A stretch of DNA of 64,000 bases from assembly GCF_000143415.4 (NCBI RefSeq), contig NW_003314302.1, positions 830,736-894,735 on the forward strand. Reading direction: 5' to 3'. The notes under the pieces are model-generated. The model was not told the DNA's origin and ran no database searches. It saw only the letters and a list, made by a program, of their open reading frames with translations. The DNA is from Selaginella moellendorffii (Eukaryota > Plantae > Lycopodiophyta). This document shows, piece after piece, positions 2,530 through 28,933 of the stretch (its first letter is position 1; each line of letters begins with the position of its first letter). The position numbers and the translations under genes are program-made.

Positions 2530-4575
2530 TTCACTGATGACTGACAACAACACGAGGAATCGCGCCCTACCATGCACGATCGATCCAAGAAAATCTAGCC
2601 CCCACCGCACGCTTCGCTTAATTTCTTTCTTTCCCGATCGATCGCGAAGGAGCGCTCTTGGGGCCCCTCGCCGCCGGGGAAGAATGGCTCTCCGTTAGGT
2701 CTGCTAACGTGTCACTTCCAGCAAATGCCACGTATACAGGTAAATGTACGTTTTAGGTGATTGGTCAAATGACATTTCAACTGATACAACTGTACTATTA
2801 TTATGCTCAGTATTTAGATATAAACTTTTTAATTCTGTCATAGATATGTATAAGTTGAGTATAATTAGATTTCATCATGACTATCATGGTTAAGTGTACA
2901 TGTCTGGAGTATAATTAGATTTCATCGTGACTATCATGGTTCTTTTTTGTCTAAGTTCATGTCTATTACTCTAGAGGTGATACACTTAACATGACAGAAT
3001 GATTTAGATAATAGAAAAAGTATTTAAATCACTAGTATTTGATATTTGGCCACATGTCTCCACAGTTAACAATTTCTACCAAACGAATATGTATGAAATC
3101 TAGAGTATGGTTAGATTTCATCTTGATCATTATCGCATTTTTACTAATATCTAATCATTTATCTGAATTTGCCATATTTTAGATTGTATACTTCAAATAA
3201 GTTTAGATTGTGATCAGTTTAAATTCCACAATAAAGATGTTATTGTCATATATTTAATGAAAGAGGTATTCAACTTATAAACAAGAGTTACTTTCTTTGG
3301 AAGTGTTATCTCTATAATGGTCAACCTTTTATGGTTTATAGTGATTATAATCCATTACACTATTTTTGCTCATAGAAGGATTTAAATGCTTGATATGCAA
3401 ATTGGAAGTTTTTCCTTGAAAACATTTCTGATATAGAAATCTGCAATAGGAAGGAAAAAATACTTATTGATGCTATTTATAGAATTTTATGTTTGAATTA
3501 TTCTAAGACATTCAAAGCAATATTGAAAAAGTATTTCTATGGATTTTATTCTAAGATATTCAGAAAGAATAAGAAGATTTGTGTTAAAATTAATCAACTG
3601 ACTAAGTACTTGATATTATCCCTCTTAAAGGTATTATTACTGTTAAGGAGTTAACAAAGAAATGATATAAAATTTAAGGTTCCCAATCCAAATCCTAAAT
3701 TCTTGATTGAGGGTTATCAACATATCTATTTTATCTCCAAGATTTTTAATTTTTTTCCATGTGTATGGAGTAGAGGATCCCAGGCCTGAGAATTTGACTT
3801 TTACTCATAAAGCCCCCAAATCCAACTTCAAGGCATTGGTTCTCCCCTTTTACATGCATTTTTAGAGCACTAAACAGCATCAATCTAGTGTTCAAGCAAG
3901 TAGCTCATGCTTCAATGGTCTAAGCTATCATACTCCACATGTACTTGGTCATCTATAAAGTCCCCACCCCAATTTTCTTCTAGCCCTCAGTAAAATATTG
4001 GAACATGCCATGAGTGCCCAAAAGCTATAGTTAAATAGGAGAGAAGATAAAAATAGCTGCTGATTTTCTAGTTCCTCCATTCACATGCGACACTACCAAA
4101 TTCCACTATAAGTGTTCCATCTTTATAGATGTTATGTCTTATTGATGGCTTGAGAAAAGGAACTTTGGGTGCTATCCATCAGGATCCACAGGAGAAGCTT
4201 AGGCCAGCCCATGAACTATACCAGGGCAACTATCCAAGGATTAATCCCTAGATTCAATTGCAATTCAGCACAAACCTGGATCTCTACCATTGCAAATTGG
4301 AGCATTCATTTGAAGCATATGCTCAATAGTGATTGCTTTAGTTTTTAACACTCTCTCACAAAATATTCATCAGTTGTGCAAAAAAAAGTGATGTCTCTAC
4401 AATTGAGAGCAGTGAGAGCCAAGAGAAGAGCCAAACATAAAAAAACGTTTTACCCTACTTTGAGGGAAACATCCCAACTGCAAGAATAGAGCTTTATTGC
4501 TTGCAAGTTCTCTTGAAGAGAGCAAAAAACCAAGTATCACTCCTTTATTCTCCCCCCAACCCAAGGTTGTGTCAT

Positions 4576-5690
4576 TGTCGTGAATGAGACTTTGGGTATC
4601 AAAATTTATTTATCGGCCAGTCCTTATGGACACTCTTTTCTTACTGCCACGATAGCAGGAGGTTGGTATTGCTAGTTCCCTTTATTAGCCTCTCTTGTTC
4701 AAGTGTTAGTAAATTGGGCTTAGCACTTGTACTTAGCCAAATGGACATAAGGTAAGAACTCTTATGTGTTTTTAGCTGAGCATACTCAACCTAACTTTTA
4801 GTTTTCTTTTGCTCTGTCTTGCACTAGCTTGATAAGAACCCTCGCGTATTGAGATTGGTCCCTCAATATCGCTGGATGATAGCTTACTGTGTCTGCCAAA
4901 CACCCTCACTATTATGCCCTTTGTGTTAGTCTTATTCTGGTCCCAAATGCTATTTATGAAAAGTGTTTAGATTTGCTCATTTGGCATCTACAGAATGTAG
5001 AGATTGGCCTAAACACAATGGTGTTCGTTCTGTGTCCAAATTCACATTGTAGTGCCATTCCATATTTAATAAGTTTTGAGCCTGTCCCAGAGACTAACTC
5101 CTGGTACTAAGGCAGGCTTAGGGTGAAAGCCCAAAGCATTCTTCAGGGAAGGGGGGGGCTGTAAGGTTCCAAATGTATAGTAGGGATAGTGGGTAGGTTG
5201 GGCATGACCGACCAACCTGAAACATAGTCTAGCTCTTGCTTGTGTGCCTGTCCTTGTTTTGTGTCCATCTTAGGTCTAAGCCCAAGTTCCATTCCATGCT
5301 AGTTGGTGGAGTACCCATGTCCTTGCGTTAGGCCACCGGTATACTAAAATAGCACTAAACTCTGTTTGGCTCCATTTTGCGTGTTGGTCCTGGCATTGGG
5401 ATGCTAGTTGCTCTAGGACTGTTCTAAGTCGTTCCGAGCTCCTGTCCCTTCACTCCTTAAGCTATATACTCAGGAGTTGTTCCGTGCTCCAGTGCTAATG
5501 CTCCTTGGCTCCATGCTTGGGAGTTTGGCACTGTTCCTTCGTTCAGTGGTCCAAGGCCCTGAACCTCGGGTTCCACACCACTGTCCTTGGACACGTGGCA
5601 TGTGTCACATGGCATAAAGAGGGTTTAGGTTCCACTTCGTGGTGTTATCCTATGGTAAATCACCATAGGATAAAGGGTCAAAACCACGTA
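4576..5690. mobile_element. Degenerate LTR-like repeat (family 'C'), homologous to 46568-48040
   Basis: Both copies begin TGTCGTGAATG and share long blocks, e.g. ggccagtcctta(t/c)ggacactctt, gggtgaaagcccaaagc and gcgttaggccac. Right end approximate. Confidence 0.65.
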
Positions 5691-8600: not shown

Positions 8601-10362
8601 TGAGTAAGGCTTTTTCTACCTATACTCGCGTTCTTGCCCCTACCTACAAAATAGTGATAAACAAACAAAGATAAAAATGTAAATAATGAAAGAAAAATGA
8701 AAAAAGAATAAAAGAGAACTCAACTTCAAACCCTAAAAGCATGAGTAAGGATAAGTATATGTCACTCTTTCAACTCTACTTTACACAAATAATTATAGGT
8801 AAAAGAAAAGATAGTTAATTCAATGCAAATGCATACAAAAGTAAGTGAAGGTTATTTTCTAGCATATTTAAGTGTTATTTATATATTACATGATTTTATA
8901 ACCAATTCTAACTATTTCTTGCTTGTCTATGATGAGTGTTGCTTAGGTTGGGTCTTTTTTCTTTCTTTGGATGCTTAAACTTACACATAACTCTAATTCA
9001 CTTAAGCTTCTTTATTTTGCTTTGCCTTTTATTTTAGGTTGCACAGGGGACAATTAAACTCTTAGTCTTAAATAAAAATAAACTGGAAAATTAGAATGGA
9101 TATATCATAAAGAAAATTAATAATATTTTTTTGATATTACTTAAGTCATGATTATATTAAACTAGTGTTTAATATTTTTTGGAGTGGTCAATTTTTTGTT
9201 TATATTCAAAAGAAAGCTTATATCTGAATGCTATGATTTGATAAAAGCTTACTAACTTTAACTGTATACTTATAATTTACAATTAATTAATTAATTAGTA
9301 ACTATATAAGATGAGAATATCCAAGGTTTATTCACTAAAAAATTATTTTATATATCATGCATTCATTCTTCATTTTTATTTTCGAAGTTAGTTTAGTTTG
9401 GGGTTGATTTCCACCACCACTCAATATCCTCTTCAGCCATCAACAACTTTGCACTCCAGTTATAATGCTTTAGAAGAACTTGAGTTTAACTTAATTGTCA
9501 AGAAATTACAAAACATATCAATAGCCCTAATTCTAAAATTGAGTTTGAAATATATGCTGTATTTTTTTGGGTTATCAATGCACCCCTCACAAATATCATG
9601 GTTTGTGTCACTGATTTGTTTATACCGTTTTATTTTTCTTCTAGCATTTTCACTTGATCATGAACCAGAATGTCTCCTGACGGAGGGTTTAAAAATCACT
9701 ATGGATTAACAAGATACTGCACTGAAATAAATACTGAATTAACATTCTATACCATACACTATTACCCAGTCTATGGAAATCAGCAGTCACCACCAAGTAG
9801 CAAAGCTATAGCATTCCAAAATGAAAAGCAAAATGGCAATGATGAAAGTGATTGTTGGAGTTTAAAGTGTTGCAAAGATTGTAAGTTGGTCTTCACAAGA
9901 AAAGGTGATTAAGCTCTTTCTCAACCCTGTGAGTGGATGCTTTGCACACCTCCAACAAGATAATTGCAGAGTGACAACATGTTTGGTTGTGAGAGGGGAA
10001 GGAAATGTTTTCATATTCAATCTAGAAACTCGTCAAGAATTGTGGAAGGCTTTAGAGTGATCTTAACTTTTTGAGTAATATAAAACTTTCTTTGAACTCC
10101 CTGTTCTCAACTTGTCTCTAGCAGGCAGAGAGCTTTTAGAAAGACGAAACAAAAAATAATCCATGTACATTTCTCCCTGTCCGCTTGTTTTCAAGGCAAG
10201 TCTTCAGCGTTTTGCAAGTGATCTTTAACTTTTTTGACTGAGAAAAACTTTTCAAGTGACCAAATCTTCAAGTGTGGTTCGTCTCTGGCCATTTGTTCCA
10301 AAAAAAAAAGAGAACGAAACAAAAAAGAATCTATATACATCTCTCCAAAGCGTGCGCTTTCT

Positions 10363-13282
10363 TCAATCGTCCTTGATGTCAATGCGTGTCTCCTTAGACA
10401 TAGAGGCATCCCGTATAGTCGATAGCACCTGTTTGATATCGAAAGGCTTTGGCAAATAACCATCCATACCCGCTTCGTAGCATATATCTTGGTAGCCTTT
10501 CATTGCGTTTGCCGTGAGTCCTATAATCGGGATCTTCTGCCATCCAGAGCCCAACTCGTCCTTTCTTATCCGCCGTGTTGCTTCCAAACCATCCATTCCA
10601 GGCATCTGTAAATCGAGAAAAGACAACAACCGAGCACAGCCGAGGTTTAAATCTGTTTGAGTCTAAACGAGTGAATGGAAATGAACAAACCTGTATATCC
10701 ATGAGCACGAGATCGTATGCTTTGTGATCTGACTTGAGCGCCTCGACAGCTTCGAGCCCATCTGAAACCGTGATCACCACATGACCGTATTTTTGCAGCA
10801 GTCGTGATGCAACTTTCTGGTTCACTAAGTTGTCTTCCACGAGAAGTACACGCTTTCTTGTGGGTGACAGCGGCGGCGTCGTAGTCGGGGACGTTTTAGC
10901 TGGCTTTATTGTTGGTTTTGGTGTTGTTGGTGATGGAATTATAAGCTCCTCGTTTGGTGAGGCCATGACTTTACTTTCATCCACTGCAAGTTTTTGAACT
11001 ATAGACTACGTCAGTGCAGAGTTTCTCATTTCTGTACCTGCACTTTCACTCGGCGCCTCTGGTGCTTCGTAGTTTGATGTCTCTTCGACTCTGGTTCCTT
11101 CGATCAAATAAAATGGAAGCAGAATACAAAAGGTGCTACCAGTACCATATTCACTCTCAACGCATATTTGACCTCCCATAAGCTCCACAAATCTGTGAAT
11201 CGTGACTTCTGTTAAACAGGATCTTGGATGAGGATTTCCTTTTTAAGTTGAATCTTAGAAACTTCGTACCTTTGGACGATGCAAAGACCCAGTCCCGTGC
11301 CTCCATACAAGCGAGAGATCGAGGGGTCTGCTTGAGTGAACGGCTTGAAGATATTTGAGAGCTTGTCTCTGCTGACCCCAATACCGCTGTCAGATACTCT
11401 AAACACCAGCTTCATCTGTGCACCATCGGATACCGTTCGCGGTTGATTCTTGACAGTGCAGTGAGGTACAAAAACGAACTTCCTTTCCGTGAGCGCCATA
11501 ACTCGGTCAGTGCTTTCTGGATCCACCGAAGGATACAGCCCGTCAACGTATGGAGCAACCGTCACTTGGACATACCCCTGGTGAGTAAACTTTAGTGCAT
11601 TTCCAACTAGACAAGTAAAACAACACTTTTCAGCACAGAAATGAGCAAACAACCAAGAAAACTCACCAAGATTCAGTAGACAATGTCTCAGCTTCCCGGA
11701 ATCCCCGACTAAAACAGTCGGAACTCTAGCATCAACGTCCCATTTGAGCCAGAGCCGCTTCTCCCTCGCGCGGGGCTCCAGAATGTGCAAAGTGCTCTTG
11801 ATAACATGACAAAGGTTGAAGGACACGAGCTCCACCTCAAAACGACCAGCCTCGATCTTAGCAACGTCCAAAATCCCGTTGATAAGGTGTAGCAGCATAT
11901 CTGCGCAGTCCTTGACAGTGGTCATGTTATCTCTCTGTTCTTCAGTAAGACCGGTGGCCAGCACCAGTGCCGACATGCCGAGTATTCCATGGATCGGAGT
12001 CCTGGCCACAAAAGAAAGAAAAATAACTACAAGGCAATGCAAAGATTGGAGAGTACCTGATCTCGTGGCTCATGTTCGCAAGGAAGTCTGATTTTGCCTG
12101 GCTTGCCTGTTCTGCGGCCGTCCGAGAGGCCGTCAACTCCTCGTTCGCCTTAAGCAACTGAGTAGTTCTTTGCAGCACTAGAACCTCGAGTCTCTCGTTG
12201 AGCCTCTCGAGTTTCTTGGAAAGGTGGCGCTTCTCCCTCACAGCTGCCGCGAGAGAGATCGCCACAAGCGCACCAACGGACACAAAGAGCTCGATCTGGA
12301 TCAACAGCCGGGGCTCCACGCGGCTGGCCCCGGAGATGCTGTAAAGAGCGCCTTTCCTCCTCACGGTCGCCCAAGCAACGAACAAGGAAGACGAAGCCAC
12401 CACCAAAGCCCAGCCGAGCCTGTTGAAACGAAAGGACGTGTAGAGGATCACCGGGAAGATCAAATAAGGCAGCGGCTTGAAGTAAGTGTAGATGGTCACT
12501 GTGTAGATCACAACCAAGAGTCCCAGCGTCACCACCATCACCGCGAAACCTTCGACCATCTTCGCGGGCTTGAGGAACTTCCTCTGCGGCCTCCAAACCA
12601 AGCAGTGGATGAGAAATGGAGACACGGTGATGATCCCAGCCACCACTCCCAGCCACCAAGTCATCCAAAATGGCATGAAATCGGCCCAGAGAACCAGTCG
12701 TCCAACGCCGGCGACGAGCGCCACGGATGCCTCAAAGATGGCGGAGATGGTCACGACGATCCCGAAGAAGAGCATCGCGTCTCTCTTGGAATCGATCGTC
12801 GGCACCACCTTGGACTGCTCCAGGCAAAGAAATCTCCGGAGCAAGCAGCTACACAGGTACGTCTCGGCCGCTTGGAGCGATGCCACCACGAACAAGATCA
12901 CAAGCCTCAAGGCCGTGAATCCTCTTCGATCGCCTCCTCCCATGCCACAGTAGTACATCTCCACGCCGTAGAAGCCGAGAAAACAGCCCGCGAGCACGCG
13001 ATGGTCCCTCTTTGCGAGGAATGCCATCGCCACGGCGTGAGGCAGCGACAAGGGAAACACGATCGTCTCCCACACTCGGTGCTGGAGCTTGGGAGCCGAC
13101 AGTTCGAATGCCGCGATCCCTGATCCCACCTCAGCTGCTATGGCGGCCAGATTCCATGCCAAGAACACCGCCAAGAACCGCGGCTCCCTCAATCGCCTGA
13201 GCGCCGAGCGAAATGCCGGATGTGGAGCTGAGATCGCGTCCCCCATGTCTCGCCCTACATTGCCGATACTGAAGAAGGCCAT
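10363..13282 (-). CDS. Hybrid histidine kinase: MASE1-like multi-TM sensor + HisKA + HATPase_c + receiver
   Basis: Exons approx. 13282-12057, 12001-11667, 11606-11270, 11192-11038, 10983-10691, 10605-10363, all GT-AG and in frame. H-box [16 protein letters not shown]-box [11 protein letters not shown]1 DSGIG, G2 GGTGLGL, receiver LLVEDN...LMDIQMP...KP. N-terminus has ~9 hydrophobic segments, including [14 protein letters not shown] and [11 protein letters not shown]. Confidence 0.92.
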
Positions 13283-13661
13283 GGACGCGCGCGTCGATCG
13301 AGCTTAGCCCCCAGCTTCTTCCATGCCCTGCGAGAAAACCGGGCGCGCAAGCTTGTCTGCCCTAGAGGAAGAGGAAATTGAAGCGTCCCCACCGGAATAT
13401 CCTGGCTACATGAATTTCCGTTTATAGACGGAAAACTAAATTCTCTTGAGAATATACCCCTCTAGCCGTTAAGACCAGCTTATCTATTTTCTCTCTTTAT
13501 TTATTATAATCACATTAGTAGTCTGGAGGACAATGGCCACATATATCTACATTTCTGCTGTAATAACGAGTTTGGTATTTGTAAAATTTTAATTAAGTTT
13601 CTTGTACAATAACTATGTAGCTTCACCACAATGCGAGCTGACCAATGGTAATGAAAGGTCG

Positions 13662-13765
<104 letters not shown>

Positions 13766-13846: not shown

Positions 13847-14783
13847 TCACTTAACGTCAACAGCAACCTGGACGTTGGTCACTGTTACACCCGAATACAT
13901 CCCACTTACAGGGTAGGTGTAGCTCTGGCTGTCTTGGGTTTTGATCACAATGGTACCATTGTAAAACAAGTTGGAAAGTTGGCCCACCTGGGTGAGAGCA
14001 GATGCAGTAACCCCAGAACACCGCCTGTTGACCACTTGAGATCAGTCACCTGGCTGTGGCTGGCTGTCCTGGTGCTTGAATTGCTCACCTCCCACTGGAA
14101 GCTCCCTGTTTCTCCAAGTCCATTCTCTGGAATCCCAGCAGAAACCTGAAAGCCTACAGTTGCAGTGAGGCCCTCAGCCTTGGAAAACTCCCATGAGATT
14201 GTCTCGCTCTTGGAGCCTTCCAGAGTCCAATTGAGGTCGGAATTCTTGCTGTCGTTAGTCTCGTCGAGACTGTCAAGGGTGACGGGTACAATACCACCCA
14301 TCTCATTGAGGCTGGGGTACTCCACATCAGTGAGAGTGAGGAGAAGCAGCGGCTTGAGGAAGACAAAGCCCCAGTTGTTAATGTCTGAACCGGTACTAGC
14401 TTCCACGCCAACCAGGTAGCCCGACCCAACGTCAAGTTTGGTTTCACTGCCCCACTTGCCAGGCCCCGCATCGAAGTTGCGACCGTTGCTGGTGGTGAAC
14501 CAGATGTGGCCTGCTCGGACGTGATTATTTGGTCCCCATCTTCCAGGCGGAGGTGATGCGCTCGGAACTCAAAGGTGTCTGAGGAATCTCCAGTAGCAAC
14601 ACCGAAAGTGGCTCCATCGTACTGGCCCTCTCCATTCTTCCACACGTAGGCACCTCTCACTCTGTTCTCCTGCTTGAAAACGGTGAGCTTGGTGATGAGT
14701 TTCCCGACCTTCCAGGCTTGGACTTCCTGGTATTGGCTACCGGAAGGGCCCCCAACCATGGTAACATCTACAATCACAGACAT
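13847..14783 (-). pseudogene. Jacalin-like lectin + aerolysin-type beta-pore-forming protein (natterin-like/Aep1 type), frameshifted
   Basis: Pieces in different frames join into MSVIVDVTMVGGPSG...TFEF/ERITS/RAGHIWFTTSNGRNFDAGPGKWGSETKLDVGSGYLVGVEASTGSDINNWGFVFLKP...LTDVEYPSL...TVGFQVSAGIPE...FQWEVS.../YNGTIVIKTQD...YPVSGMYSGVT. Frameshifts near 14545-14565 and ~14012. Intronless. Confidence 0.82.
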
Positions 14784-15494
14784 GTTGGCACAAATCAAGC
14801 AAATGCAATATATATAATGGATGATCGTCAAGAAAGGATCGAACTGCTCAACCAATGAAGTCCCGAGCCAATGCTGCTTGGCTCAGGACTCGTTTTATAG
14901 AGGGCTTTTGGCACAATGCAGATTCATGTGAATAGAGCTTGCCAATACACTGTACATATATCGGCACGCGTTTGGTAATTTTGTCTTGTATTTCAATGAA
15001 CATCCTCTAAATTTGTACCCCTAAACCACATTCACCCACGAGGCGATTCCATCACTGACATTCAGCTTTGCGGCCGCCTCTGTTTTATGGTGGGCATGAC
15101 CCGCCTTCCGTACCTGGGTTCATGTCATGTCAGTTTAATACCATTTAAATATTTAAAAAACATTTAGACACTAATTTTAATCAGTAATTTGCAAAAAATC
15201 AGATAAAAAGCACTTACAGAAAGAGCAGTGGGTCCTGCATGCGAGCGCAAGTTTTGCTTCAGCGGGCCACCATTTCGAAACTCGTCACTTTGCGATGTGC
15301 TGCATGGAATCTTCAAGGTTGAGTTGATTGCACAAGAGAAATGTGCAATCTATTTTCTATTCAAGTAGTGCCTGAAATTGGCAAACACGACCATAAGGAA
15401 GAATTGAGTTTAGTCCCAGAGCCTAAAACTAGATTCTACAGCCAAGCAGACCACATCAACATGGTTCCCAAGTGTTGTAAACGTTTCACTTGAT

Positions 15495-26742: not shown

Positions 26743-28933
26743 TCAAACAGATGATTTGCATTTAGCGTTACCTGTTTTAGGTTCCTCCAGAACTTTTTCT
26801 GCTCTATGCACTCTCTCCCAAGCCTCTCGAGCCTGCAAGATGTTAAAAGTTAGTATCATGACCTCAGTAGCTCTTTTCCTCACTTGTTTTTGCCAGTTTG
26901 TCGAGAGGGTAACGATTGTGAGGAGAGTCGCTTGAGTTGCAATGCCGCAAACTATGCCAATCCACAAACCCTGTAAAGAGAGTCAGAAAACTAAGATGCA
27001 CGAGGAGAAAGTCAGACATACCCTTCCCTTCAGATCGAAGAAGAAAGCCAAAACTGATCCCAATGGTAAACCCACAATATAATATGCTCCAAGGTTTGCA
27101 ACGGCGCCTAAACCTTGCCATCCACAGCCTCTAGCTACACCTGCATACAATCAAAGTTTAGCTAGAGAAAAACTTAAAACAACAAGCGAGGACCTGAAAA
27201 AATCCCTTGAATAGGATCCAGAACACTTATGAGTGTTGTAAGTGGCATTAAGCTTGCTACGTACTTGACGACCTCCTCCTCGTTGCTGAAGGCATATCCC
27301 AAGACGTTCCGCGTCGAGAGCAACAGTGTAGCAACTAGGCAGGAATCCAAAAGTCCAATGCTAATTGTCACACATACTGCAGTCTTTGCGGACACTGGGT
27401 GCCCAGCTCCAAGTTCATTTGACACTCGAGTGCTGCCAAAGGAAAAACTTATAAAATTGCAAAGGAAAAAAAAGCTTTTTGAGTCAATTCTCTTACCTTG
27501 CTGCCGCACTCAGGCCATAAGGAACCATATAGCACAGAGACAATGTGTTTAATCTGCAACAGAACAGATGAGGACCACAAACTCTAGTTTCCCACAAACT
27601 TACATAATCGAGAAAGCTGACGTTTCAAGTTGAGGGTTGGGCAAAATTCCGGAAAGAAGTACGAGAGTTTCGAACGACCAGTACTCAAAGCTGCCAGAAC
27701 ACGAAAAATTCAGCACTGCTTTAAACCATAGAACACTTTCTTACCAGATCATAACCGCCGAAGGTATAGCGAGCCGGAAAAAGCCTCTGAAGTCTTGAAA
27801 AGCCTCCGCCGAGAAAGTGGTCCACGTCTTCTGACATGTCTTCGAGAACTTGACATAGCTCGCCAGTAGTATGGCATTGAGCCAGTTGGAAAAAGTCGCT
27901 GCTATGGCGGCCCCCTTGATACCAAACTCAAGCTTGTAGACAAAAACCCAGCACAGTGGAATGTGGACACACAGCGTGAACAGCGAGCACAACATCATCG
28001 GGATCACGGCACTCTGCGTCTGTAGGAACTTGACAAGCGGCTGGAGAGCCGAGTAGGCAACCAGTCCCGGGATCAACCATCGAGCGTAGATCCCAGCGTT
28101 GTAAGAGATGACCGGATCCTGTCCCAGGGCCTTGAGAAGATGTTCCACGTTGAGCCACACGACGGCAATCGGTACGCATAGGATGAGGAGGACTACAACA
28201 GCTCTTTGTAGATAAATGCCAAGTAAGTGATACTGCCGTGCTCCAAACGCTTGTCCGCAAAGAGTTTCAATACCACTGGCCATGCCCATCTAGACAAAAA
28301 AAGTGTCAACAACAAAACTGTGAGCGACACGCCCTGACACGATAGATACAGATTGAAAGGCTGACTGGGAGGACAAAATAACCAGTCAAGACGATAAACT
28401 AAAGGACAAGGAAGCATATGTGAGCCATACGTACCAGAAAAAAACCCTCAAACATCAAATAGGAAACTCCAACTTACATGTTTCACACGAAGAACACACT
28501 AGGAAGCGAGAATGAAAACGAAAAATCTCTTCGCGATGATGCAAAAGTTATGCGGTTGAAATGCTCTAGCTCTCGAATTTCGCCGAATTTCGACACGTAC
28601 CAGGAAGCTGAAGCCAGTGACAACGCAAAAGGACGTGGCGAGGGAAGCGCTGGCGAGCTGGAGCTCCCCCAAGTGCCCCACGAGCATGACCGACGTGACC
28701 TGGATCAAAAACTGGAGGAGATTGACGCAGATCATCGGCAGCGCAATGTAGCACTGGCGCTTCACCTCCTCCCACAGCACCAATCGGTCCTCCTCCTCGA
28801 GGCAATCCAATGCTCTGCCGCTGTCAGCCTTGCGATCGTCATTCTTGAGCGCCGGCGCCGCCGATCCGGAGCTCTCTGTGCATGGTGTGGATTCCTCGCC
28901 GGGCAGCAGCGCCACGCGAAGATCCGCGGCCAT
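26743..28933 (-). CDS. MATE (DTX) efflux transporter, 8 exons
   Basis: Motifs MLVGHLGELQLASASLA, GMASGIETLCGQAFGARQY, RLAIPSAVMI, STRVSNELGAG, GVARGCG and GLWIG across GT-AG exons. Confidence 0.93.

What the first reader, a model, noticed from the sequence alone, without database searches (positions are those of the whole stretch)
10363..13282. Intron-containing plant hybrid kinase with a bacterial-type MASE1 membrane sensor
The characterised seed-plant histidine kinases use CHASE, ethylene-binding/GAF, AHK1/CKI1 or phytochrome inputs; MASE1 is mainly a bacterial sensor. Here an intact spliced gene encodes MASE1 in one GC-rich exon, followed by HisKA, HATPase and REC with the phospho-His and phospho-Asp retained. 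Inference: a two-component input of unknown ligand in non-seed plants, possibly of microbial origin. Surveys of eukaryotic kinases may already list this architecture.
Basis: partly seen in the sequence, partly recalled or inferred. Interest (0 to 1): 0.7.

Follow-up and report, generated by a model that had tools for sequence, protein, structure and literature searches.

The report
Known spikemoss MASE1 histidine kinase gene
This is a real, spliced and transcribed Selaginella moellendorffii gene for a membrane sensor kinase with a bacterial-type MASE1 input; the gene is already annotated and its class already described in non-seed plants, so it is ordinary, apart from an odd frame-breaking splice form in the few RNA reads seen.

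Summary
A six-exon, minus-strand gene (13282..10363) encodes an 862-aa MASE1-HisKA-HATPase_c-REC hybrid histidine kinase. Pfam MASE1 scores 49.4 bits (cut-off 29.8). His406, the N/G1/F/G2 boxes and Asp780 are intact.

It is not new. The model equals public protein EFJ19475.1 / UniProt D8S874 (S. moellendorffii LOC9634821). Plant MASE1 kinases were described by Ishida 2010, as cited in Kabbara 2019 (PMC6324907), for Physcomitrium, Marchantia and Selaginella. Marchantia has named genes MpMASE1 and MpMASE2.

Sensor and kinase trees each give one plant clade. Two intron positions are shared with other land plants. The GC-rich first exon is a 5'-3' gradient also seen in three of five related genes. 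So any microbial origin is ancient, and no donor is identified.

Two additions:
- All five listed RNA reads across intron 3 use an acceptor 16 nt upstream of the in-frame one. This shifts the frame and stops translation at 11159-11157, yet the downstream exons show purifying selection (dN/dS 0.12). The scan reported early-stopping mRNAs for the paralogue on other DNA (s1-405342).
- The first half of the modelled MASE1 domain resembles ECF-transporter S components.

The signal sensed remains unknown.

The parts
12057..13282 (-). Exon 1 (CDS start 13282). Encodes aa 1-408 plus 2 nt: the N-terminal tail, the MASE1 domain, a long signalling helix and the start of HisKA up to SHEI(R).
   Evidence: Sequence read; Pfam MASE1; tiles P0151 residues 1-408; RNA contigs cover 12056-13363.
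12227..13075 (-). MASE1 domain (aa 70-352 by Pfam; the hydrophobic region starts near aa 36).
   Evidence: PF05231 scores 49.4-49.8 bits against a cut-off of 29.8. The AF2 model has pLDDT 94.6.
12065..12067 (-). Codon of His406, the phospho-accepting histidine of the H-box SHEIRTP.
12002..12056 (-). Intron 1 (55 nt, GT-AG), placed right after SHEI/R. By tblastn exon ends, the Diphasiastrum and Marchantia genes break at about the same place.
   Evidence: RNA contig joint 12000/12056 (cut +1); exon ends.
11667..12001 (-). Exon 2: rest of HisKA (DHp) and the start of the catalytic domain.
   Evidence: Pfam HisKA; tiles P0151 residues 410-520.
11607..11666 (-). Intron 2 (60 nt, GT-AG).
   Evidence: Sequence. 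Support from RNA is weak: the contig's 10-letter loose end at 11667 matches exon 3's start with 1 mismatch, and another contig runs 11270-11607. The RefSeq model P0001 uses a different splice here and loses the N box.
11270..11606 (-). Exon 3: N box ([10 protein letters not shown]), G1 (DSGIG), F (FKPFTQAD) and G2 (GGTGLGL).
   Evidence: Pfam HATPase_c; motifs read.
11193..11269 (-). Intron 3 as needed for the full-length protein (77 nt, GT-AG, phase 2 in the Arg633 codon). The position is conserved in the paralogue and in Marchantia, Diphasiastrum, Physcomitrium and Sphagnum.
11193..11208 (-). A 16-nt segment kept in the observed mRNAs. The acceptor AG at 11210-11209 is used instead of the one at 11194-11193, which shifts the frame.
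   Evidence: Joint 11208/11270 (skips 61) in 3+1+1 reads of three RNA runs. An RNA contig reaches 11199. The paralogue has an analogous upstream TTAACAG 17 nt before its in-frame AG.
11157..11159 (-). Premature TGA reached in the observed splice form, after 16 out-of-frame codons. The predicted product is 649 aa, without the end of the ATP-binding domain and without the receiver.
   Evidence: Translation.
11038..11192 (-). Exon 4: last strands of HATPase_c and the start of the linker.
10984..11037 (-). Intron 4 (54 nt, GT-AG).
   Evidence: Joint 10983/11038 in a contig and 3 reads.
10691..10983 (-). Exon 5: Pro/Thr-rich linker and the first half of the receiver (E734, D735, D780).
10697..10699 (-). 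Codon of Asp780, the phospho-accepting aspartate of the receiver.
10606..10690 (-). Intron 5 (85 nt, GT-AG, phase 0).
   Evidence: Joint 10605/10691 in a contig and 2 reads.
10363..10605 (-). Exon 6: second half of the receiver (T813, K835) and the stop TGA at 10365-10363.

Best explanation
This is Selaginella moellendorffii LOC9634821 (SELMODRAFT_419211, UniProt D8S874). It is a vertically inherited member of the already described plant MASE1-type hybrid histidine kinases and falls in the MpMASE2-like clade.

Inferred mechanism:
- A polytopic MASE1 domain of about 8 helices lies in a membrane.
- It is coupled through one long continuous helix to the DHp domain.
- A signal in or at the membrane changes autophosphorylation of His406. 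The signal could be a small molecule held in the S-component-like half, or a docking partner protein as in E. coli DgcE.
- The phosphate passes to Asp780 of the protein's own receiver.
- From there it goes to separate HPt proteins and response regulators.

Shown here: gene structure, transcription, domains, catalytic residues, purifying selection and family membership. Inferred: topology, phosphorelay partners and the nature of the signal.
For: Pfam places all four domains above their cut-offs. Kabbara 2019 describes this class in Selaginella, Physcomitrium and Marchantia. Named relatives include MpMASE2, MpMASE1, mosses, liverworts, a hornwort, a lycophyte, ferns and Closterium.

The MASE1 tree gives a plant clade with SH-aLRT support 100 and groups the lycophytes together. 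The kinase tree gives a plant clade of 33 rows with support 100; one of these rows (P0054) has no organism on record. Intron 3 has the same position in six genes.

RNA reads come from the minus strand only, and introns 1, 4 and 5 are confirmed. The other haplotype's allele is 98.7% identical, with 23 synonymous and 9 non-synonymous changes: dN/dS 0.12, p 1.6e-8. The AF2 model has pLDDT 94.6, with a continuous helix from the last membrane helix into the DHp. E. coli DgcE is the precedent for MASE1 acting as a docking site.
Against: All five listed intron-3 junction reads give a frame-shifted mRNA that stops at 11159-11157. The full-length protein may therefore be rare in the tissues sampled. 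No ligand, partner or phenotype is known for any plant MASE1 kinase in the papers I could search. Kinase activity is untested.
Confidence: 0.87

Rival explanations
1. The locus is regulated by splicing. The frame-shifting upstream acceptor of intron 3 is the default choice and gives an NMD target or a 649-aa receiver-less, probably kinase-dead MASE1 protein. The full-length kinase is made only under particular conditions.
For: Five junction reads in three runs use the upstream acceptor, which accounts for about all of the depth there. An RNA contig runs 7 nt past the in-frame acceptor. The paralogue keeps an equivalent out-of-frame AG 17 nt upstream, although the rest of the intron differs. 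An earlier scan note reports early-stopping mRNAs for the paralogue. Exons 4-6 are still under purifying selection (10 synonymous, 4 non-synonymous, p 1.6e-4), so the in-frame product must matter.
Against: Only five reads, from one study plus one contig set, support it. Read laying lists a joint only from 3 reads or a contig, so one or two in-frame reads could be hidden. The conserved TTAAC may simply be the branch point of the in-frame acceptor. Marchantia shows no such nearby upstream AG, and the nearby upstream AGs in Diphasiastrum and Physcomitrium are 9 nt away, so in frame. I did not test the paralogue's transcripts here.
Confidence: 0.3
2. The gene is decaying: a pseudogene in the making whose transcripts are mostly non-productive.
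For: The frame-shifted splice form dominates the few reads. Expression is low, at about 1-3x depth in roughly 12% of each of three 10.8-gigabase runs.
Against: The reading frame is open across all six exons and every catalytic motif is intact. dN/dS between haplotypes is 0.12 overall and 0.12 for the exons downstream of the shift. A paralogue and orthologues keep the same architecture.
Confidence: 0.05
3. The gene is a recent bacterial transfer or an assembly contaminant.
For: MASE1 is mostly bacterial. Exon 1 has GC3 0.75. More than 100 bacterial hybrid kinases score 358-489 bits on the kinase part, whereas the best solved plant kinase fragment (7p8e) scores 254 bits.
Against: The gene has five spliceosomal introns that are removed in RNA. 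Intron positions are shared with bryophytes and a lycophyte. A second haplotype copy sits beside a jacalin gene in the public assembly. The plant sequences form one clade on a long stem (2.02 changes per column) away from all 77 other rows; two sampled rows are named bacterial-type, four carry no name, and the rest were not looked up. The GC3 gradient is shared by three of five related genes.
Confidence: 0.01
4. The N-terminus belongs to another characterised plant receptor class (CHASE, ethylene-binding, AHK1/CKI1-type or phytochrome), and the MASE1 call is spurious.
For: None was found.
Against: MASE1 is the only Pfam family hit on exon 1 at E up to 1, and it is 20 bits above its cut-off. 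NCBIfam's best match for exon 1 is the kinase EspC, over aa 132-362. The ESM Atlas neighbours of the model are MASE1 clusters with TM 0.69-0.76.
Confidence: 0.01

Closest known systems
Plant MASE1-domain histidine kinases (Ishida et al. 2010, as cited in Kabbara et al. 2019, PMC6324907), including Marchantia MpMASE2 (P0161) and MpMASE1 (P0015) and the Physcomitrium MASE1 kinases
   Same: They share the MASE1-HisKA-HATPase_c-REC architecture and sit in the same clade in both the sensor and the kinase tree. The intron after the G2 box is shared. Identity is 38-41% in the MASE1 region and 45-56% in the kinase part. This gene is a member.
   Different: The two Selaginella proteins are shorter (862 and 798 aa, against about 1050-1190) because their linker regions are shorter. 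They carry a frame-shifting tandem acceptor in intron 3 that I did not see in the other species examined.
Selaginella paralogue LOC9655983 (P0157, locus L001; earlier scan finding s1-405342)
   Same: Identity is 52% (MASE1) and 54% (kinase). It is sister to this gene in both trees. It has the same intron 3 and an upstream out-of-frame AG.
   Different: It lies on a different scaffold with different neighbours. Its upstream AG is 17 nt away, not 16.
Bacterial MASE1 signalling proteins, such as E. coli DgcE and a Chthoniobacteraceae MASE1-PAS kinase (P0026)
   Same: They share the MASE1 family, with near-invariant W-x-x-W-W, P, E, R and G positions. The ESM Atlas models superpose at TM 0.69-0.76. 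In DgcE the domain is needed for activity and docks the GTPase RdcA.
   Different: Identity is only 20-29%. Their outputs are often GGDEF/EAL or HisKA_3 and often include PAS domains. They lack introns. No bacterial group is resolved as sister to the plant clade.
ECF-transporter S components (4hzu_S, RibU, ThiT, FolT, BioY, PanT, BtuM; QueT family)
   Same: Model residues about 8-213 (protein residues 27-232) superpose on whole S-component chains. The best is Z 14.4, rmsd 3.1 A, over 160 of 164 residues, and the top 14 rows are all of this kind. With the half-domain model, Foldseek's only hits with TM of 0.44 or more are ThiT, RibU and PanT. QueT is the first non-MASE1 family in the Atlas.
   Different: No sequence similarity was detected: a profile search of PDB found none. 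The Foldseek E-values are not significant. The tool warns that helical bundles can reach Z of about 14 by chance. There is no ECF module here. This is a fold resemblance only, not membership. From memory, and unverified here, Pfam may already group MASE1 with these families in one clan.
Plant cytokinin-receptor-type kinases (best solved match 7p8e_A; related entries 7p8c and 7p8d are titled receiver domain of histidine kinase 4)
   Same: They share the hybrid-kinase transmitter plus receiver, and this is the best solved-structure match to the kinase part (254 bits).
   Different: The input domain is different (per Kabbara 2019, cytokinin receptors carry a CHASE domain). The kinase part scores well below many bacterial hybrid kinases.

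Membership tests
MASE1 domain (Pfam PF05231) | Match to the family profile above the curated gathering score | tested here: met
   49.4 bits on exon 1 alone and 49.8 bits on P0151, against a cut-off of 29.8, covering profile positions 24-299 of 299.
MASE1 domain (Pfam PF05231) | N-terminal, predominantly hydrophobic region of about 300 aa with 8-10 membrane helices | tested here: met
   Hydropathy peaks span aa 36-348. The AF2 model shows 8 long helices with pLDDT 94.6. The description of the domain is in PMC6510439.
MASE1 domain (Pfam PF05231) | Family-wide conserved residues (W..WW, P, E, P, R, G) | tested here: met
   Near-invariant columns in the alignment of 93 sequences are all present in this protein: W206, W209, W210, P222, E244, P277, R285, G311 (numbering +19).
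Hybrid histidine kinase (HisKA + HATPase_c + Response_reg) | H-box histidine; N, G1, F and G2 boxes | tested here: met
   SHEIRTP with His406; [10 protein letters not shown]; DSGIG; FKPFTQAD; GGTGLGL. Pfam scores 67.9 and 84.5 bits.
Hybrid histidine kinase (HisKA + HATPase_c + Response_reg) | Receiver with acidic pair, phospho-Asp, Thr/Ser and Lys | tested here: met
   E734-D735, D780, T813 and K835. Pfam Response_reg scores 93.2 bits.
Hybrid histidine kinase (HisKA + HATPase_c + Response_reg) | Autophosphorylation and His-Asp phosphotransfer activity | not testable with these tools
   This needs biochemistry.
Plant MASE1-HK class (MpMASE2-type clade) | Groups with named plant MASE1 kinases to the exclusion of bacterial sequences, in both the sensor and the kinase | tested here: met
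   The sensor tree gives a clade of 16 rows with SH-aLRT 100. The kinase tree gives 33 rows with support 100, within which the MpMASE2-type clade of 22 rows has support 100.
Plant MASE1-HK class (MpMASE2-type clade) | Class reported for this species in the literature | tested here: met
   [quoted passage not shown] The organism is identified.
ECF-transporter S component | Six-helix S-component fold | tested here: inconclusive
   Z 14.4, rmsd 3.1 A, 160 of 164 aa, and a consistent top 14. Foldseek gives TM 0.50/0.55 but E 0.57. QueT gives TM 0.67/0.52. Helical-bundle matches at this Z can be chance.
ECF-transporter S component | Sequence-family membership | tested here: not met
   No Pfam S-component family hits exon 1. 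No S component appears in the profile search of PDB sequences at E up to 10.
ECF-transporter S component | Association with an EcfT/EcfA module | not tested
   I did not look for EcfT or EcfA partners here.
Other plant receptor inputs (CHASE, ethylene-binding/GAF, phytochrome) | Profile match in the N-terminal region | tested here: not met
   MASE1 is the only Pfam hit on exon 1 at E up to 1.

The most novel reading that the evidence does not exclude
Both Selaginella MASE1 kinase paralogues keep a frame-shifting tandem acceptor (16 or 17 nt upstream) in the conserved intron after the G2 box. This could act as a splice switch that normally keeps receptor output off, through NMD or through a receiver-less, truncated MASE1 protein, and releases the full-length kinase only on a cue. 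That would be post-transcriptional gating of a plant two-component receptor.
Probability: 0.2. Interest if true: 0.45.

Novelty: already known. Interest (0 to 1): 0.2.

Why it matters
As a class, plant MASE1 kinases are orphan receptors. They are present in bryophytes, lycophytes, ferns and at least one zygnematophyte alga, and no seed-plant protein appeared among the named hits here. No ligand or phenotype has been reported in the papers I could search. This window adds no new class.

It gives three modest, testable points. First, the family is old and vertically inherited, with shared introns and congruent sensor and kinase clades. Second, the Selaginella genes may be mostly spliced into a non-productive form. 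Third, the sensor's first half looks like the small-molecule-binding S components of ECF transporters, which suggests looking for a membrane-soluble small ligand.

Tried and rejected
- Sequence search of the MASE1 part against solved structures found nothing. A profile of 93 MASE1 sequences against PDB gave only coiled-coil noise.
- Foldseek with the whole model found nothing (best E 0.1, TM below 0.2).
- A paper hit with 11 'MASE1' occurrences turned out to be locus tags MASE_1xxxx and is irrelevant.
- 'MpMASE1' occurs in no searchable paper. No paper links MASE1 to S components.
- The kinase tree does not place bacterial MASE1-bearing kinases next to the plant clade. The sampling was biased by how rows were chosen, and no other plant kinase classes were available as tool-given sequences. 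So whole-gene transfer versus domain shuffling stays open.
- The Diphasiastrum protein P0005 had no locus on record.
- Pfam found nothing on six of seven neighbouring mechanical ORFs.
- The RefSeq model P0001 (830 aa) was rejected as the best model. It drops the N box through an odd splice with an implied intron of about 31 nt, while an RNA contig runs uninterrupted through that stretch.
Full report
**What is there.** The minus strand between 13282 and 10363 carries a six-exon gene with five short GT-AG introns of 55, 60, 77, 54 and 85 nt. I searched it exon by exon, by reference. Pfam gives:
- MASE1 in exon 1 (49.4 bits, gathering score 29.8, aa 70-352);
- HisKA in exon 2;
- HATPase_c in exons 3 and 4;
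- Response_reg in exons 5 and 6.

NCBIfam's best match for exon 1 is the kinase EspC, over aa 132-362. The H-box (SHEIRTP, His406), the N, G1, F and G2 boxes, and the receiver's E734/D735, D780, T813 and K835 are all present. Exon 1 is indeed GC-rich: GC 0.58 and GC3 0.75, against GC3 0.35-0.59 downstream.

**Identity.** A search of exon 1 against 1.84 billion representative proteins found a 100% identical protein. Its cluster holds three entries:
- XP_024540226.1, 'uncharacterized protein LOC9634821 [Selaginella moellendorffii]';
- EFJ19475.1, SELMODRAFT_419211, UniProt D8S874, 'histidine kinase', 862 aa (P0151);
- EFJ21027.1, 'sensory histidine protein kinase' (P0152).

Each of my six exon translations is an exact substring of P0151, in order, with only the split codons between them. 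Full-length analyses used the stored public protein.

P0152 lies on another scaffold beside a jacalin-domain gene (L002). Its DNA is 98.7% identical over the gene, so I read it as the allele of the other haplotype in the assembly.

A true paralogue is LOC9655983 (P0157, L001). It is 52% identical in the sensor and 54% in the kinase. At 3028 letters, its gene matches the length of earlier scan finding s1-405342, so I take that finding to be on this paralogue.

**Already known.** Kabbara et al. [quoted passage not shown] 2010)'. [quoted passage not shown] Marchantia has named genes MpMASE1 and MpMASE2. A 2026 PLoS Biology paper lists PF05231 among the Pfam domains annotated on its tree of streptophyte histidine kinase homologues. 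My searches add named homologues in:
- Sphagnum, Ceratodon, Riccia and Calypogeia;
- the hornwort Nothoceros;
- the lycophyte Diphasiastrum;
- the ferns Adiantum and Ceratopteris;
- Closterium, in a messy fused model.

No seed plant appeared among the named hits. That is not proof of absence.

**Origin.** A maximum-likelihood tree of 93 MASE1 domains puts all plant sequences in one clade (16 rows, SH-aLRT 100). A long stem of 2.02 changes per column separates it from the other 77 rows; two sampled rows are named bacterial-type, four carry no name, and the rest were not looked up. Inside the plant clade the two Selaginella genes are sisters (98) and group with Diphasiastrum (92).

A tree of the DHp plus catalytic core of 127 proteins also gives one plant clade: 33 rows with support 100, one of which (P0054) has no organism on record. 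It splits into an MpMASE1-type group, which includes the ferns, and an MpMASE2-type group (22 rows, support 100) that holds this gene.

The intron after [12 protein letters not shown] sits at the same codon in this gene, its paralogue, Marchantia, Diphasiastrum, Physcomitrium and Sphagnum. By tblastn exon ends, the first exon also stops at about the H-box in Diphasiastrum and Marchantia.

The 5'-3' GC3 gradient recurs in the paralogue (0.64 to 0.51), in Marchantia (0.72 to 0.46) and in Physcomitrium (0.62 to 0.47), but not in Diphasiastrum or Sphagnum. It is therefore not a mark of recent foreign DNA.

The kinase part scores higher with many bacterial hybrid kinases (358-489 bits) than with the best solved plant kinase fragment (7p8e, 254 bits). 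No donor lineage is resolved, and I had no tool-given sequences of other plant kinase classes to compare. My conclusion is that the sensor and the kinase have travelled together since before land plants diverged. 'Microbial origin' is plausible only as an ancient event.

**Expression and the splice oddity.** Three stranded RNA runs and one set of contigs cover the gene from 10352 to 13363 at low depth, with first mates only on the plus strand. With the usual stranded libraries that fits RNA from the minus strand. Joints confirm introns 1, 4 and 5. A short loose end with one mismatch fits intron 2.

At intron 3 the listed joint is 11208/11270 (61 nt skipped), in 3, 1 and 1 reads of the three runs. 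That is about all of the local depth. An RNA contig also runs to 11199, seven nucleotides beyond the in-frame acceptor. This acceptor lies 16 nt upstream of the one that the full-length protein needs. Translation then reads [16 protein letters not shown] and stops at 11159-11157. The predicted product is 649 aa, without the last strands of the ATP-binding domain and without the receiver. With two exon junctions downstream of the stop, the mRNA would be a likely NMD target (inference).

Three cautions apply:
- there are only five reads;
- the tool lists a joint only from three reads or a contig, so a few in-frame reads may be hidden;
- the two haplotypes are identical in this intron, so the reads cannot be assigned to either.

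Against decay, the allele comparison gives 23 synonymous and 9 non-synonymous changes (dN/dS 0.12, p 1.6e-8). For exons 4-6 alone it gives 10 and 4 (0.12, p 1.6e-4). The paralogue keeps an equivalent TTAACAG 17 nt before its in-frame AG, although this motif may simply be the branch point. In the other species examined, upstream AGs near this acceptor are absent or sit 9 nt away, so in frame. The earlier scan note on the paralogue also reports mRNAs that stop before the end of the kinase. I did not re-test that.

**Structure.** AlphaFold2 with 93 MASE1 sequences gives a confident model of aa 20-400 (pLDDT 94.6, pTM 0.90). It shows eight long helices, the last running uninterrupted for about 75 residues into the DHp.

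There is no sequence match to any solved structure. Foldseek with the whole model finds nothing. An exhaustive structural alignment puts ECF-transporter S components and CbiM in the top 14 rows, all on model residues about 8-213. The best is 4hzu_S (Z 14.4, rmsd 3.1 A, 160 of 164 residues), and unrelated rows start at Z 8.1.

A separate model of the first half (pLDDT 92.8) makes ThiT, RibU and PanT the only Foldseek hits with TM of 0.44 or more, but at non-significant E-values. In the ESM Atlas the first non-MASE1 family is QueT, another S-component family (TM 0.67/0.52). The aligner warns that helical bundles can reach such Z by chance, and profile searches show no sequence link. I therefore treat this as a fold resemblance and a lead, not membership. 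From memory, Pfam may already place MASE1 in a clan with these families. I could not check this.

**Mechanism.** Shown: an intact, transcribed, selected hybrid kinase gene with a MASE1 input. Inferred: a signal in or at the membrane changes the long coupling helix and thus His406 autophosphorylation, with relay to Asp780 and on to separate HPt proteins and response regulators. The nature of the signal is open. [quoted passage not shown] The S-component-like half supports a small-molecule mode.

**Verdict.** Novelty is 'already known' and interest is low. The frame-shifting splice form and the fold resemblance are worth a note but rest on thin or indirect evidence.

Noticed in passing
window 11193-11210; L001 about 5117-5133: Both Selaginella MASE1 kinase paralogues have a TTAACAG whose AG lies 16 nt (this gene) or 17 nt (paralogue) upstream of the in-frame acceptor of the conserved intron after the G2 box. 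In this gene, all five listed junction reads use that upstream AG.
   Followed up: partly
window 12587-13204 (protein aa 27-232): The first half of the modelled MASE1 domain superposes on ECF-transporter S components (Z 14.4 with 4hzu_S; ThiT, RibU, FolT, BioY, PanT, BtuM; QueT in the ESM Atlas), without any detectable sequence similarity.
   Followed up: partly
window 11520-11606: The RefSeq model XP_024540226.1 (P0001) replaces the N-box segment [31 protein letters not shown] with [11 protein letters not shown], using another acceptor and an implied intron of about 31 nt. An RNA contig runs straight through 11270-11607, which favours the JGI model.
   Followed up: partly
window about 13650-13750: A long (TA)n microsatellite lies in the AT-rich spacer (GC 0.24-0.28) about 400 nt upstream of the start codon.
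   Followed up: no
window about 13900-14860, minus strand: A GC-rich coding-like stretch lies just upstream. On the other haplotype (L002), the gene called at the matching place carries a Pfam Jacalin domain. My mechanical ORFs there gave no Pfam hit.
   Followed up: partly
window 27741-28289, minus strand: An ORF with a strong MatE (MATE efflux transporter) match (96.5 bits), presumably one exon of a MATE gene.
   Followed up: no
P0040 (Closterium sp. NIES-65): This public 2774-aa model fuses a protein kinase, retrotransposon gag/pol pieces and a MASE1-HisKA-HATPase part. It is probably a mis-merged gene model, but it shows a MASE1 kinase in a zygnematophyte alga.
   Followed up: no
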